Shown piece after piece: positions 57,640-63,531 of a stretch of DNA of 64,000 nucleotides. A model generated the notes under the pieces. It saw only the letters and a list, made by a program, of their open reading frames with translations, made no database searches and had not been told where the DNA came from. Every line of letters starts with the position of its first letter. Positions within the stretch are counted from its first letter, which is position 1. The position numbers were made by a program, and so were the translations under genes. This DNA is from Magallana gigas (taxonomy: Eukaryota): assembly GCF_963853765.1 (NCBI RefSeq), contig NC_088859.1, forward strand, positions 53,196,001-53,260,000. Direction: 5' to 3'.

Positions 57640-58090
57640 AAATGGAATTCCTATAAACATTTCTAGATTTAGTCATTGCATATACATGTACGTTGTTCAC
57701 ATATTCCGTTTTCCATTCCACATTTAAGCAACACTTTATATAAATAGTGCCTGTTTGGGAGCGTAACAGTTGAAATTGACACCCCTCGAAAACCATTGTC
57801 AACCTCCGCTTCACGTCGGTTGACAATGGTTTTCGAGGGGTGTCAATTTCAACTGTTATCCTCCCAAACGGGCACTATTTATTTTATTATACTGAATGTC
57901 TTAATTTTTAAGAAAATTTTACTGCTTTTATATAGGAATAACGTGAACCGTACGCGCATAATTTTCGCGCATGTAACAATTTGTAATGTTACCCATTGCT
58001 AAGTGCGTTGCTAACGCTGAGGGTAATAGAAAGGATTATGAACTGCGTCTTAACCAATCAGATTTCAGTATTTAACATTAAAGTATAACA
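57640..58090. mobile_element. Interspersed repeat with a central 65-bp-arm palindrome (possibly Crypton-like non-autonomous element)
   Basis: Arms 57740-57804 and 57818-57882 with 3 mismatches; AACCAATCAGAT near the right end. Outer boundaries and family are approximate. Confidence 0.5.
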
Positions 58091-58502: not shown

Positions 58503-59133
58503 TTAAGGCTCAGATTTTGCATCCAAGTTGGTCTTGTCTTTCAGTATCCCCCGATACATCATCCAAGCAAGTTACATGTATTTAGCAAGTTTAGAACTAG
58601 TAACAATTTAGATATGGGCAAATTTTAACAGGATGTCAAGTCCAAGGGTAAAGCATGAATTACCAGAATGAGGTAAGTCTTCCATAATATGCTATTGCAT
58701 GTGTACTGTAAACAGATTTTATTAAGCTTGTGCAATATGAAGCAAAATTTGATTTTTCAGTAGGTTAGCATAGATTTGCTTTCTAAATTTACCTAAATTT
58801 TTTTTTACAAACATGTATTTTGGTGATGTGATTTAGCTGAAACTCTTTTCCATAAAAACGCAACATAAAATTACACAGCTATTAATTTAAAAAATGTAAT
58901 AGCCTTTACAGTAACATGGGCATTAAAATGTGTACAGGTCAACTTTGTGCTATATACATCTATCAGAATATCGAAAAAAAATAAGGTATGTGCAATGGGA
59001 ATATCCCACCTAAGACAGGTTAAGAAAGAAACTCAACATGTGTAAGCATGTGTAAGCATATTTTAATTAAATTCATTATCAACAAATCTACAAGAGTCAA
59101 TCTGTCCATGTCCTTGTCACTTGTAACATTTCC

Positions 59134-60878
59134 TCACATTTCACCTCGGGCCATTTTACTTTTAATTCTCGCCTCCCGAACCATCAGTCTTCTTTCTCTT
59201 TCATATTCTTTCATTCTTAGCACAAAACTGAAAATAATCATTGAATGTCATTTTTAAGAGTGAAAAGAAAAGACAATTCATTATGATATAGTATAAAAAA
59301 ATCCAAAGATTCATCTTTTGAAATGCCAACTCTAGCTTGTCAGGTTTCAATAATGGCTAAAATTAAAAATCTACTGGGATTTTACATGTCAAATGACATG
59401 AAAGTACTCCGTGTGACAACACTAAAGAATTTTTTGAGGTGTTCTGAGTATATTTCCAAAGATTTTTAGGATAATCTAATTTTCGCTTTTTTGCTACCAC
59501 TTTTACATTGCAAAACATTCAATACGGAGAAATTATATAAGGTATTGTTAACTATAAGAAACTTTTAAATTGCAAAAAATATCTGAGGCAAATAAAAAAT
59601 TACACATTTTCTCCATTTTTGCAAATTTTGTGACACATGAAAATAACCGGATATACTGGTACTGTACCAGTTATAGGTTAAAAGCAATTATCAGCTAAAC
59701 TGAGAGTTCAAGTTTAAAGCATACATGCATATGGGACTGACATTTTTTTTACATCAGTTGTCTGTCACAAATAAAGGAAAGTAAGTTTCCTTTAAAACAT
59801 TCTTGAATAGTTTTAAACATGAGCCTAAACATTCATTGTTTACCTGCTAAATAAATTTACATTTTGGCACTTTTAGCAGTGGGGGAAGTGAAAAATAAGT
59901 TAATTTAATCTCTCTTTGTGATATGTCATTATATACCTTCTTTGATTGGACATATAATAGCAACACATAAACAAAAGGAATTCACTAAATTCTGAGAGGT
60001 TCATAAAATAGTTGAACGCATGATTGCACAATTACGTATTGAATAGTCAACTTACTCTTCTATTTGGTTTATAAGTGTATGATAACAAAGGGATAATTTT
60101 ATGAGTTTTCAACTTTCGCGTATGCATCATACCCCCTTCAACCTTTAGTCTGACCCCACGAGGGGCATAATTCAAGTAACGTTTGCAGAGTATTAATTCA
60201 ACATGACTGATGTACATTGATTTTAATTTGTTATCATCACAAAGCTGATAACTGGTGTAGTTAATTGTAAAACTTGGCAAATTCTGGGCGAGTTAAAAGC
60301 ACAAAAAACAAGATGTTGTTGACTCAAATAATGATATAACCTAACAAATGGATAAAAAGGTTAATTAATATTAGCACCAATAAGCCACAAAAAGTGTTGA
60401 AAGAAAAAATGTTTTTATTATATTTTCATAATTTCTCTGCTGAAAATATGACTTTTAAACTTACTCTTCATGTTCACACGCCTGAAAATCCTGAAATACA
60501 AGATCACAAGGCAGATATGGCCATTTATTATCTTTCTTGCAGTCCAAAAATTTTATGTACATGTATGCACAATAATCCCTTCTTCTCAATGGGAGAAGGT
60601 GAGCATCCATCTCTTCGAGTGTTACTTTTGGATCTTGAAGGGAAAAAAAACGAGTATTAATCATGCAATCATGTACATAAATTGTTTAGCTTAGTAAACA
60701 TTAATTTAGAAAAGTGTTGTTTCGAATTTCCTCTATACATTCAAGCATACATACCTCTAATTTTCCTTCCATTGGGAAAGCCAACGAAGGGATCAAACGT
60801 GGGCTCTTTTTTCCAGTCTGGTCGTAACTCAGGACCATACCATAAGTCCCTAACGGGTGCACAATTAGCCTGTCCCAT
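59134..60878 (-). CDS. NDUFB7: NADH dehydrogenase (ubiquinone) 1 beta subcomplex subunit 7, 128 aa
   Basis: Exons 60755-60878, 60465-60633, 59134-59227. MG start, PTFDPFVGFPNGRK, LPLRRRDYCAY, twin CX9C motifs, FVLRMKEYERERRL. Confidence 0.93.
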
Positions 60879-61428
60879 ATTCAGGGCTCTCTCCTTTCGT
60901 TGACCGAGAGCACAGAGACGGTTCTTTGTCTATTCGCGAATAAAGTGTTTGAACACTGTTATCGGGATTCTCACTGCCCAGTCAGTTTTTGGCAAACAAG
61001 TAAATTTTAGAAATGTATACTTTTAGGCCCACATGTTTATGGTTTATACGACTTAAATATTGATCGCATATATTTGGATATCGTCAGTTCAATGACACAC
61101 AAGGCTATGCCGACTAACATACCAATGAGCCCCTTTCATATTTTTAAAATATCTTTAGATCTTTTAAAAAAAAACCTGCAGCTTTGCAGGTCTGAGTGAT
61201 GAAAAGACGCATTAGTTCTGTACTTGAATACGTAGTTTGCACACAAAACAACTTGTAAAACCTTTAAAATTTTGCTTATATAAAACAAAGATTACTCCTT
61301 TTTTATAGTAATTGGGGTGAAACTTCTAGGGAACGAGACGGAAGACACCCCTTATATTTTGGAACAAGTTAACAAATTACATTGGCCTTTTCTTACTTCC
61401 GGTCTCATGGTCGACACACACTAACAGT
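60879..61428. promoter_or_regulatory. Probable bidirectional promoter region of NDUFB7 and EIF3I
   Basis: 550 bp between divergent start codons; ETS-like CTTCCGGT near 61396 inside a pyrimidine tract. Confidence 0.6.
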
Positions 61429-63531
61429 ATGGTGAGCATAATTGATAGAAAAACGCCATTTTTATTCAATTGTACTTCATTATTAGCTTATATGGATAGT
61501 CTTCATCTCAATAGTTGCAATAGATATAACGTTATACATGAGGCCATGAGGCTTATGTTGATTATCTATGATTCATAGATAATTTTATTGGGGGGGGGGG
61601 GGGATGTTTTCCTTGTTCTAGACAGTGATACATTTAAATATACAATGGTTTCCATGTCTCAGTTTTATCAAACTGTAAGTAGTCTTGACATAAAATTCAA
61701 AAGTAAAATTTTATCACGTTAACCCATTTAGAATTAGAGGCACATTATCTGGGTAATTGCTCGCTTAAACAATCTCGTCAAGCTGGAGGTTTTGGCGAAA
61801 CGGGTCATTTGACTCTGATCTCTTATTCACTCTGATTAGATTTGCCCCAAGTACTCAGACACTGATTGTCGGGTGCTCATCTGATCAATAACGATGAGCA
61901 GTTTAATTAAACTCAATGATAAGAGGGAGAGACCGATCCTTTGGAAAGTTTTTCCGAAAGTATTGTAGTAGTTGGGGCTATATGGACCATGGATATCGGC
62001 CTGGGTAGCTCAGTGGTAGAGCTCCTGACTAGAGTTGCAGGTGTCTCGGGTTCGATTCCCGGTCCAGCCATTCGTTGTATTTATATACTCATTCCTCCTT
62101 TCCTACTACAGATGGTGCCGTGGCCTTCCTTGTTCAGGCATATATATATATATATATGTCCTGACAAGGTGAACTTGTGTTGGGTCTTCGGGGTCAAAGA
62201 CTATTTAAGGAGGGAGGAAAATGTAGTAGTTGGGGCTATATGGACCGTGGATATCGGCCTGGGTAGCTCAGTGGTAGAGCTCCTGATTAGAGTTGCAGGG
62301 GTTCCGGGTTCGATTCTCGGTCCAGCCATATGTTTTCGTTGTATTTATATACTCATTCCTCCTTTCCTACTACAGTATCATTTTACTTAAATATTTTGTT
62401 ATGGCAAGTTGTATTCATTGGGGTAATTAAAACTGTAAGTATTTTTAAAAGTGTCATTTTATTAATGACTGATACAAATATGAAATAAGGCATCATTAAA
62501 ATTTAACATACAGTTCTAACTTGGTGCAGAACTCTCTGTATTTCTTATTTTAATTTCATAATAATTTTATCCGTAAGTTAACTGAAATGCAGCGTAAAAT
62601 TTTACAGCTCTGGAAATAATTAAGAAATCATTTAGTAATGTGAAAAATTAACTTTAAATTAACAATTCTCTATAACTAGTAAATCATTTACAGTTTTACA
62701 TTGTTTTATACATAATTAAGTGTAAACTCAGAAAATTGGTTAAAAATGCCTTCCCTTCAAACAGAACAAATGTTTATAACATTTAATAGTTGTTTCATAA
62801 AACACAATGTTATCAAACATTTGAGGTATGTTTAGTGTGATGGATACAAGTGTTAGAGCTTCAGCCATTATGCCACCTGTATTGAAAGTTTGAAACAAGG
62901 AGAAACCAATTGGTACGAAACCTCTTGGTGCAAACTCGTGTTTGGGGTGAACCCACCTGTTACCATCTATTTAATTTGATATCAGACATTTCTTCGATGC
63001 AACCAAACAAGTGAAGATAAAAAAGGCTTTACTTAAAGTCAATGTGAATCTTAATTTTAATTGAAATTTTTTATTTTATTCATACATTTCAGAAACCAAT
63101 TCTCTTGCATGGACACGAGCGGTCCATCACTCAAATCAAGTATAATAGGGAAGGAGATCTGATATTTTCCTGTGCTAAAGACTCGCAGCCCAATGTCTGG
63201 TACTCTCTGAATGGAGAAAGACTGGGTTCTTTCAGAGGCCATAATGGCGCTGTGTGGAACATTGATGTCAACTGTATCCTTTGTTACTATAAAATCATTA
63301 TGATCCTATAAAGCAGTTTTTATATAAAAAAAAAAATTTTAAAATATGAAGGAGTTCAAATTGAATATGGAAATATGGAAGTCCTAGATTATTAGATTCA
63401 AAGATTTTAACAATATTTTGTTAACATGATGAACACAAATTCTGGTTTTCCTGAACTGCTTCCAGGGGAGTCAACAAAAGTGCTGACAGCAAGTGCAGAC
63501 AACACCTGTAAACTGTGGGATTGTGAAACAG
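61429..63531 (+). CDS. EIF3I: Eukaryotic translation initiation factor 3 subunit I (WD40), 5' part; continues beyond the window
   Basis: ATG-only first coding exon (61429-61431, ATG|gtgagc, inferred), exon 63093-63273 ([26 protein letters not shown]), exon 63466-63531 ([23 protein letters not shown]). Confidence 0.92.
61998..62070 (+). pseudogene. tRNA-like Pol III promoter module (A and B boxes) in the 5' LTR
   Basis: TAGCTCAGTGGTAGAGC (A box/D arm), GGGTTCGATTCCC (B box/T arm); ends GGC(C)TGGG and TCCAGCCA partly pair; anticodon arm irregular. Confidence 0.75.
62256..62328 (+). pseudogene. tRNA-like Pol III promoter module in the 3' LTR
   Basis: Second copy of the same 73-nt module with a few substitutions. 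Confidence 0.75.
63274..63465 (+). other. U12-type (minor spliceosome) GT-AG intron in EIF3I
   Basis: 5' splice site GTATCCTTTG; U12-like branch point TTTTCCTGAAC at 63446-63456, about 10 nt before the terminal CAG. Confidence 0.88.

What the first reader, a model, noticed from the sequence alone, without database searches (positions are those of the whole stretch)
61964..62374. Complete miniature LTR retroelement with a tRNA-derived Pol III promoter in each LTR (Helenus/Cassandra-type TRIM) in EIF3I intron 1
Seen: two ~150-bp direct repeats bounded by TG...CA, an exact 4-bp TSD (GTAT), a PBS (TGGTGCCGTG, complementary to the 3' end of tRNA-His), a polypurine tract and a 111-bp non-coding interior. 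Each LTR holds a 73-nt tRNA-like unit with A and B boxes. Established: plant Cassandra TRIMs carry 5S promoters in their LTRs, and a tRNA-carrying group (Helenus, 4-bp TSD in animals) has been described. Inference: a SINE/LTR hybrid transcribed by Pol III and mobilised by an autonomous LTR partner. The LTRs differ by only a handful of substitutions and one small indel, so the insertion is fairly young.
Basis: partly seen in the sequence, partly recalled or inferred. Interest (0 to 1): 0.8.

Follow-up and report, generated by a model that had tools for sequence, protein, structure and literature searches.

The report
Known oyster Helenus-2B miniature retroelement copy
This is a real, complete 411-bp miniature LTR retroelement carrying a tRNA-like unit in each LTR, but it is an ageing copy of Helenus-2B_CGi, an oyster family already published in 2024, so the finding is correct and ordinary.

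Summary
RNA reads place it in EIF3I intron 1.

It is not new. The consensus Helenus-2B_CGi (Crassostrea gigas; Kojima 2024, PMC10886601, Data S1) differs from the 3' LTR at 5 of 153 positions. The published LTR length (153 bp), PBS assignment (tRNA-His) and TSD length (4 bp) also match.

The genome holds at least 16 other LTR-interior-LTR copies, at least 10 with their own 4-bp TSDs. That excludes a local SINE duplication.

The window copy is mid-aged: its LTRs differ by 4.1% (other copies examined 0.7-14%). The missing T4 in its 5' LTR is a private 6-bp deletion.

Pol III transcription remains unshown. The reads gave no discrete start or end on the element.

Small additions: a gag-only His-primed LTR family shares its termini and PPT, and an autonomous Ty3/Gypsy shares the leader hairpin of sister family Helenus-2.

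The scan also noted a Helenus-like TRIM elsewhere in this genome (s1-366471).

The parts
61960..61963 (+). left copy of the 4-bp target-site duplication GTAT
61964..62110 (+). 5' LTR, 147 bp, TG...CA; lacks 6 bp (TATGTT) and therefore the T4 run
61999..62070 (+). tRNA-like unit of the 5' LTR (A box 62006-62016, B box 62049-62059)
62113..62122 (+). primer-binding site TGGTGCCGTG, complementary to ...CACGGCA+CCA of tRNA-His
62128..62169 (+). leader hairpin (arms 62128-62148 / 62149-62169) with an (AT)n loop; kept with one compensatory pair in Helenus-4_CVi
62183..62202 (+). second short hairpin just upstream of the PPT (one arm carries a G>A change in this copy)
62207..62221 (+). polypurine tract AAGGAGGGAGGAAAA
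62222..62374 (+). 3' LTR, 153 bp; 5 differences from the published Helenus-2B_CGi LTR consensus
62257..62328 (+). tRNA-like unit of the 3' LTR (A box 62264-62274; B box 62307-62317 with its last C changed to T)
62333..62336 (+). TTTT run 4 nt after the tRNA-like unit; candidate Pol III terminator and R/U5 border
62375..62378 (+). right copy of the TSD GTAT
61409..61431 (+). EIF3I exon 1 (5' UTR plus ATG), host-gene context
61432..63092 (+). EIF3I intron 1 (GT..AG, 1661 nt); it contains the element, which lies in sense orientation
63093..63273 (+). EIF3I exon 2 ([22 protein letters not shown]...)

Best explanation
The element is one fixed-looking, decaying copy of Helenus-2B_CGi. That is a published family of non-autonomous miniature LTR retrotransposons (TRIMs) of Crassostrea oysters. 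The copy sits in sense orientation in intron 1 of EIF3I.

Shown here:
- the full LTR-PBS-interior-PPT-LTR anatomy with a 4-bp TSD;
- near identity to the published consensus;
- many other copies at other loci with the same anatomy and their own TSDs;
- a host tRNA 3' end that is complementary to the PBS.

Inferred mode of action:
1. RNA polymerase III starts at the tRNA-like unit of the 5' LTR, using the A and B boxes.
2. It reads through the weak T4 that follows that unit.
3. It stops at the same T4 in the 3' LTR. The tRNA-like unit plus its short trailer (about 80 nt) would then be the terminal repeat R. About 35 nt upstream would be U3 and about 38 nt downstream U5.
4. The RNA is packaged, through the hairpin that follows the PBS, by proteins of an autonomous His-primed Ty3/Gypsy element.
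5. It is reverse-transcribed from tRNA-His and integrated by an integrase that makes 4-bp TSDs.

This particular copy is probably no longer competent. Its LTRs have diverged by 4.1%. The 3' B box and the second hairpin each carry a substitution, and the 5' LTR carries a 6-bp deletion.
For: - Anatomy.
- Family identity: Data S1, Fig. S2C and Tables S1/S3 of PMC10886601. Published values are LTR 153 bp, interior 114 bp, TSD 4 bp, His PBS. By eye, the 3' LTR differs from the consensus at 5 of 153 positions.
- Genome copies: 48 scored matches from 340 first-look candidates. Twenty distinct LTR-interior-LTR units were extracted from the loci. PBS and PPT are conserved, and exact 4-bp TSDs differ between loci: GATG, ATGT, CAAC, TGTA, GTAT, ATTG, TTAA, CATC, CAAG, CTAA.
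- Copy numbers: 224 LTR starts and 36 Helenus-2B-specific leaders in the genome, with 0 in the reversed-pattern controls.
- T4: it sits at LTR position ~112 in most LTRs of the copies, and 16 of 20 interiors have no T4. The same T4 is present in the Helenus-2, 2B, 3_CGi, 3_CVi, 4_CVi, 1_SaGl and 2_SaGl consensuses.
- Primer: the host tRNA-His 3' half occurs 15 times exactly, in clusters.
- Partner leads: the gag-only His-primed family L066 shares the LTR start, LTR end, PPT and 4-bp TSD. The autonomous Ty3/Gypsy L070 (PR-RT-RNaseH-IN, His PBS) has a leader that aligns with the Helenus-2 interior, including a hairpin with a compensatory change.
- Host context.
Against: - No transcript start at 61999 or 62257, and no end at the T4, was seen in poly(A) or random-primed RNA reads. 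Reads on the element lie on both strands and carry the variants of other copies. The test is weak, because such libraries under-sample short Pol III RNAs.
- The lack of other T4 runs is not significant for one element (shuffle P about 0.36).
- The tRNA-like units fold no better than shuffled sequence.
- Some Helenus families have no T4 after the tRNA-like unit, so the R model may not be general.
- No autonomous element sharing the Helenus-2B LTR termini was found. The LTR start of L070 could not be defined, and further genome sequence could not be fetched.
Confidence: 0.9

Rival explanations
1. The two repeats are a local tandem duplication of an ordinary tRNA-derived SINE, not an LTR element.
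For: Each repeat contains a tRNA-like head, as a SINE2 does.
Against: The same LTR-interior-LTR unit occurs at many unlinked loci, each with its own 4-bp TSD. The PBS and PPT are conserved across copies. There is no poly(A) or LINE-like tail. The element matches a published TRIM consensus.
Confidence: 0.01
2. It is a Helenus TRIM, but the genomic RNA is made by RNA polymerase II, either from a U3 promoter or by read-through from host genes. In that case the tRNA-like unit is a relic of a SINE insertion, or serves another role such as packaging or an insulator, and is not the promoter.
For: A T4 directly after the tRNA-like unit should stop much Pol III transcription after about 80 nt. RNA reads on the family are found in poly(A) libraries and on both strands, as expected for copies embedded in Pol II transcripts. 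Kojima states that promoter function is unvalidated.
Against: The A and B boxes are conserved across Helenus families, which otherwise differ in U3 and U5. U3 is only about 35 nt, short for a Pol II promoter. The plant analogue Cassandra is described as being transcribed from its 5S promoter. Element lengths fit the range expected for Pol III.
Confidence: 0.2
3. The window copy is a young, still active source copy whose loss of the 5' LTR T4 makes it a better template.
For: The 6-bp deletion removes the only T4 of the 5' LTR, which would favour full-length Pol III transcripts.
Against: Both LTRs are re-made from one RNA at each cycle, so an LTR asymmetry cannot be inherited. None of the other copies examined shows this deletion, whereas most keep the T4 in both LTRs. 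LTR divergence is 4.1%. The B box of the 3' LTR and the pre-PPT hairpin are mutated. Reads over the element carry the variants of other copies, not this one.
Confidence: 0.03

Closest known systems
Helenus-2B_CGi (Crassostrea gigas; Kojima 2024, Biology 13:119, PMC10886601, Data S1)
   Same: The LTR is 153 bp and begins and ends with the same sequence. The tRNA-like unit, the T4, the His PBS preceded by GA, the leader hairpin, the second hairpin, the PPT and the 4-bp TSD are all the same. The 3' LTR differs at 5 of 153 positions.
   Different: The differences are copy-level decay only: a 6-bp deletion in the 5' LTR, an (AT)n loop in place of the AT-rich consensus loop, two extra A at the end of the PPT, and a few substitutions. 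Two of those substitutions are shared by both LTRs and by copies L002 and L003, so they were inherited.
Helenus-2_CGi and Helenus-2C_CGi (same paper)
   Same: Helenus-2 has nearly the same LTR, the same PPT and the same His PBS. Helenus-2C has a homologous tRNA-like unit (85% over 60 nt).
   Different: Their interiors carry a different leader hairpin (CCCCTGGAACTGACAGG...). Helenus-2 looks like a mosaic of a 2B-type LTR and a 2C-type interior.
Helenus-4_CVi (Crassostrea virginica, same paper)
   Same: It is the counterpart family in another oyster. It has the same leader hairpin with one compensatory pair, the same T4 after the tRNA-like unit, and the same LTR end CTACTACA.
   Different: Its LTR is 161 bp, the LTR start is TGTGGTAGTTCGGG, and the PBS reads TGGTGCCATGG.
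Cassandra (plant TRIM with 5S rRNA in the LTRs; Kalendar et al. 2008, as summarised in PMC10886601)
   Same: The design is the same: a Pol III-type small-RNA gene inside each LTR of a TRIM, whose terminator would set the short R repeat.
   Different: Cassandra carries 5S rather than tRNA, occurs in plants, and is 565-860 bp long. It is an independent origin.
tRNA-derived SINEs (SINE2)
   Same: They have a tRNA-like head with A and B boxes, are short and are non-coding.
   Different: SINEs have no LTRs, PBS or PPT. They are mobilised by LINEs, end in a tail, and make TSDs of variable length.

Membership tests
Helenus (TRIM with tRNA-derived sequence in LTRs) | Short non-autonomous element with two LTRs (published range 311-1263 bp) | tested here: met
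   The element is 411 bp, with LTRs of 147 and 153 bp at 96% identity. The mechanical 149-aa ORF across it only reflects the LTR repeat. Interior lengths vary from 100 to 138 bp among copies.
Helenus (TRIM with tRNA-derived sequence in LTRs) | tRNA-derived sequence with A and B boxes in each LTR | tested here: met
   Rfam RF00005 scores 44.3 and 41.1 bits against a gathering score of 29. ARAGORN calls both units. The box motifs are present.
Helenus (TRIM with tRNA-derived sequence in LTRs) | PBS complementary to a tRNA just after the 5' LTR | tested here: met
   TGGTGCCGTG lies 2 nt after the LTR. The host tRNA-His 3' half ...CCTGGTCACGGCA is present 15 times exactly. The paper makes the same assignment.
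Helenus (TRIM with tRNA-derived sequence in LTRs) | Polypurine tract abutting the 3' LTR | tested here: met
   AAGGAGGGAGGAAAA at 62207-62221, conserved in the other copies.
Helenus (TRIM with tRNA-derived sequence in LTRs) | 4-bp TSD (animal Helenus) | tested here: met
   GTAT here. At least 10 other loci have exact, mutually different 4-bp TSDs.
Helenus-2B_CGi | Sequence identity to the published consensus | tested here: met
   I compared the element by eye with Data S1. The 3' LTR differs at 5 of 153 positions. The 5' LTR has 5 substitutions plus a 6-bp deletion. The interior is the same outside the AT-rich loop. I did not run an aligner, because the consensus could not be passed by reference.
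TRIMp3 (TRIM transcribed from its own Pol III promoter) | Transcription starts at the small-RNA unit of the 5' LTR and is carried out by Pol III | tested here: inconclusive
   No pile-up of starts or ends on the element in four runs, at a depth of 1-9 on both strands. The libraries are poorly suited to this question.
TRIMp3 (TRIM transcribed from its own Pol III promoter) | Mobilised in trans by an autonomous LTR retrotransposon (Ty3/Gypsy in animals) | tested here: inconclusive
   Candidates only. The gag-only family L066 shares termini, PPT, PBS and TSD length. The autonomous Gypsy L070 shares the PBS and the Helenus-2 leader. No partner was found with the Helenus-2B termini.
Cassandra | 5S rRNA-derived sequence in the LTRs | tested here: not met
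   Rfam finds tRNA and no 5S on the element.
SINE2 | No LTRs; LINE-type 3' tail; variable TSD | tested here: not met
   LTR, PBS and PPT are present, and the TSD is fixed at 4 bp.

The most novel reading that the evidence does not exclude
The oyster Helenus-2 group may be the bottom tier of a three-level parasitic set that shares one set of cis signals: tRNA-His PBS, TGT(A/G)GTAG...CT(A/G)CTACA termini, an AAGG(A/G)GGGAGGAA polypurine tract and a 4-bp TSD. The tiers would be an autonomous His-primed Ty3/Gypsy, a 3.8-kb gag-only derivative with identical LTRs that looks recently active, and the tRNA-bearing TRIMs. In these TRIMs the conserved T4 right after the tRNA-like unit would define R, so the terminal repeat of the genomic RNA would itself be the tRNA-like unit. 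Neither point is made in the 2024 paper.
Probability: 0.3. Interest if true: 0.4.

Novelty: already known. Interest (0 to 1): 0.15.

Why it matters

For the field, the open question is the one Kojima states: nobody has shown that Helenus LTRs are working Pol III promoters, or which element moves them. The oyster genome offers material for that test. It has intact-looking His-primed Gypsy elements, a gag-only family with the same termini, and Helenus copies with a T4 exactly where an R/U5 border would be expected.

Tried and rejected
- RNA evidence for a Pol III start: none found. Reads over the element come mostly from other copies and lie on both strands. This is a weak test, not evidence of absence.
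- T4 avoidance as a sign of Pol III transcription: not significant for a single element (P about 0.36). Copies are not independent, so I did not pool them.
- Cloverleaf stability: the tRNA-like units fold no better than shuffles (z +0.7 and +0.4). That fits a promoter relic rather than a working tRNA.
- Partner search by the Gypsy-39-type PBS string. It gave 127 His-PBS places in at least 10 LTR families.
  - L033 has an LTR end ...GAACTACA but no ORF and no second LTR.
  - L034/L054 is Helenus-2C.
  - L049/L065 has an LTR end CCTTACTACA but belongs to a low-copy, truncated family next to a DIRS-like element.
  - L071 is a Gypsy without a His PBS core.
- The mechanical 149-aa ORF across the element was rejected as coding. 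It is a by-product of the repeat, and indels among copies break the frame.
- The comparison with the published consensus was made by eye.
- No later paper on Helenus function was found.

Full report
**Observation**

- Two direct repeats of 147 bp (61964-62110) and 153 bp (62222-62374) start TGTAG and end CTACA. They differ by six substitutions and one 6-bp indel.
- They are flanked by GTAT on both sides (61960-61963 and 62375-62378).
- Between them lie 111 bp. This interior begins, after GA, with TGGTGCCGTG (62113-62122) and ends with AAGGAGGGAGGAAAA (62207-62221).
- Each repeat holds a 72-nt tRNA-like unit (61999-62070 and 62257-62328). Rfam's tRNA model scores them 44.3 and 41.1 bits against a gathering score of 29. 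ARAGORN calls both with an 8-nt anticodon loop and no isotype.
- The A box TAGCTCAGTGG and the B box GGTTCGATTC(C/T) are present in both.

**Host context**

RNA reads from three runs show a GT..AG joint from 61430 to 63092 and a pile of molecule ends at 61409. Exon 1 ends with ATG at 61429-61431. Exon 2 starts [22 protein letters not shown], the N-terminus of EIF3I. The element therefore lies in sense orientation in EIF3I intron 1 (61432-63092). No joint uses the element, so there is no sign of exonisation.

**It is a mobile family, not a local duplication**

A search of the window's own genome (564 Mb, 29 contigs) gave 48 scored matches out of 340 first-look candidates. From the fetched loci I extracted 20 distinct LTR-interior-LTR units.

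The PBS and PPT are conserved in them. Exact 4-bp TSDs differ from locus to locus: GATG, ATGT, CAAC, TGTA, GTAT, ATTG, TTAA, CATC and CAAG, plus CTAA around a three-LTR tandem. A few copies have 3 of 4 matching or no TSD. One apparent pair of copies (L008 and L010) is a duplicated segment, 99.1% identical over 2.2 kb.

Pattern counts give 224 places with the LTR start and 36 with the family-specific PBS-leader. The reversed-pattern controls gave none.

**It is already published**

Kojima (Biology 2024, 13:119; PMC10886601) defined Helenus as TRIMs with a tRNA-derived sequence in the LTRs. The paper reports 4-bp TSDs for the animal families and 51 families in pteriomorph bivalves, including Crassostrea gigas.

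Its Data S1 holds Helenus-2B_CGi. Tables S1 and S3 give an LTR of 153 bp, an interior of 114 bp, a 4-bp TSD, and 260 LTRs and 45 interiors in the oyster_v9 assembly. Fig. S2C assigns the PBS to tRNA-His.

Read against that consensus by eye:
- The window's 3' LTR differs at 5 of 153 positions.
- The 5' LTR differs at 5 positions plus the 6-bp deletion.
- Two of these differences are shared by both LTRs and by copies L002 and L003, so they were inherited.
- Three substitutions in each LTR are private, which accounts for the six differences between the LTRs.
- The interior matches except for the AT-rich loop, which is an (AT)n run here, and two extra A at the PPT.

The second group of copies I met (L023-L029) is Helenus-2_CGi. 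The sequencing runs that hold the locus are labelled as oyster metagenome or as one coded organism. The genome is therefore C. gigas or a very close relative. That is an inference.

**Age**

LTR-LTR divergence among the 20 units runs from 0.7% to 14%. The Helenus-2B copies range from 2.0% upward, and the window copy is at 4.1%. It is mid-aged, not young.

DNA contigs of an independent run enter the element from both flanks, and no empty-site joint was listed. Runs from at least eight studies hold the locus. The insertion looks widespread. The contigs reach only 8 and 26 nt into the element, so this is not formal proof.

**The T4 asymmetry**

In 17 of 20 5' LTRs and 18 of 20 3' LTRs a T4 is present, in nearly all of them about LTR position 112, four nt after the unit. 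Sixteen of 20 interiors have no T4. The published consensuses of Helenus-2, 2B, 3_CGi, 3_CVi, 4_CVi, 1_SaGl and 2_SaGl have it too, whereas 1_CGi, 2_CVi, 2C_CGi and the fish families do not.

The asymmetry in the window is therefore a private 6-bp deletion. It could not be inherited anyway, because both LTRs are rebuilt from one RNA at each cycle.

**How it most likely works**

By analogy with Cassandra, as summarised in the paper, the likely scheme has five steps:
1. Pol III starts at the tRNA-like unit of the 5' LTR.
2. It reads through the weak T4.
3. It stops at the T4 of the 3' LTR. This gives an RNA whose terminal repeat R is the tRNA-like unit plus a short trailer, with about 35 nt of U3 and about 38 nt of U5.
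4. tRNA-His primes minus-strand synthesis. The host carries 15 exact copies of the matching 3' half, in clusters.
5. The PPT primes the plus strand.

The paper does not discuss terminators in Helenus and states that promoter function is unvalidated. My test of this was weak and negative. In poly(A) and random-primed raw reads, and in RNA contigs, depth on the element is 1-9 on both strands against about 0-1 in the flanking intron. The reads carry the variants of other copies, and no start or end pile-up appears.

T4 avoidance is not significant for one element (P about 0.36). The tRNA-like units fold no better than shuffled sequence, which fits a promoter relic. The interior folds better than shuffles (z -2.5). 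Its main hairpin, directly after the PBS, is kept in the C. virginica counterpart Helenus-4_CVi with one compensatory pair: CCTTGTTCAGG/CCTGACAAGG against CCCTGTTCAGG/CCTGACAGGG. A role in packaging is plausible but is an inference.

**Partner**

The extended His PBS occurs at 127 places, in at least ten LTR families. Two of these are of interest.

The first is L066/L067, a 3.8-kb element.
- Its 582-bp LTRs are 100% identical, and it has a 4-bp TSD (CAAC).
- It has only a 555-aa ORF, for which gag is the only Pfam hit and a weak one (below the curated cut-off in L066, just above it in the 538-aa L067 ORF).
- All LTR pairs in the genome lie about 3.2 kb apart, so the family itself is gag-only.
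- Its cis signals resemble those of Helenus-2B: LTR start TGTGGTAGATCGGG against TGTAGTAGTTGGGG (Helenus-4_CVi has TGTGGTAGTTCGGG), LTR end CCTGCTACA against CCTACTACA, and PPT TTTAAGGGGGGAGGAA against TTTAAGGAGGGAGGAA.

The second is L070, an autonomous Ty3/Gypsy.
- It has a gag of 473 aa and a pol of 1296 aa with protease, RT, RNase H and integrase.
- It has a His PBS, and its LTRs are 100% identical over the 648 nt seen.
- Its leader aligns with the Helenus-2 interior over about 62 nt. The alignment includes a hairpin with a compensatory change: CTCTGG...CCAGAG against CCCCTGG...CCAGGGG.
- Its gag is 42% identical to that of L066.

These are leads to the mobilising lineage, not proof. No autonomous element with the Helenus-2B termini was found, and further genome sequence could not be fetched.

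**Verdict**

The novelty is nil at the level of the finding, because this is a copy of a published family in the species, or a sibling species, from which the family was described. The small additions are the T4 as a candidate R border, the shared cis signals with a gag-only family, and the leader homology with an autonomous Gypsy. They are modest and partly inferential.

Noticed in passing
window 57697-58090: A very high-copy repeat. Summed DNA contig word depth exceeds 1e6, and RNA depth is 60-200 on both strands, with many loose ends at its edges. It was not identified.
   Followed up: no
window 58826-60882 (minus strand): A spliced gene lies head to head with EIF3I. Its exons are 58826-59227, 60465-60633 and 60755-60882, joined by CT..AC joints. 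With the EIF3I start near 61409, this leaves a bidirectional promoter region of about 500 bp.
   Followed up: partly
L066:1473-5278 (G000:C1:46172472-46176277) and about 15 further paired copies: A gag-only LTR family of 3.8 kb with a His PBS, a 4-bp TSD and LTRs up to 100% identical. Its LTR termini and PPT resemble those of Helenus-2B.
   Followed up: partly
L070 (G000:C7:11865500-11875499): An intact-looking His-primed Ty3/Gypsy. A 39-bp tandem duplication doubles the LTR end plus PBS (PBS cores at L070:2172 and 2211). A second gag hit lies 8,050 bp further on, suggesting a tandem array.
   Followed up: partly
L008 (G000:C10:19819858) and L010 (G000:C6:15216824): The same Helenus-2B copy with the same flanks sits on two chromosomes, 99.1% identical over 2.2 kb. 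This is a segmental duplication or assembly redundancy.
   Followed up: partly
G000:C8:49928578-49929253 (L006/L012) and G000:C4:50687621-50688287 (L024/L026): Three-LTR tandem Helenus arrays (LTR-interior-LTR-interior-LTR). The first is flanked by the TSD CTAA.
   Followed up: partly
L065:4797-8692 (G000:C3:20689796-20693691): ORFs with reverse transcriptase, RNase H and a tyrosine recombinase, which indicates a DIRS-like element.
   Followed up: no
G000:C1:45203975, C8:40552211, C1:45647676, C6:37265786, C9:14767334: Five places share only the last ~77 nt (PPT region plus LTR start) with the gag-only family, at 88-94% identity. They may belong to an autonomous relative. They could not be fetched.
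   Followed up: no
published consensuses and loci L023-L029, L034: Helenus-2_CGi looks like a mosaic. Its LTR is almost that of Helenus-2B and its interior almost that of Helenus-2C, as if two co-packaged TRIM RNAs had recombined.
   Followed up: no
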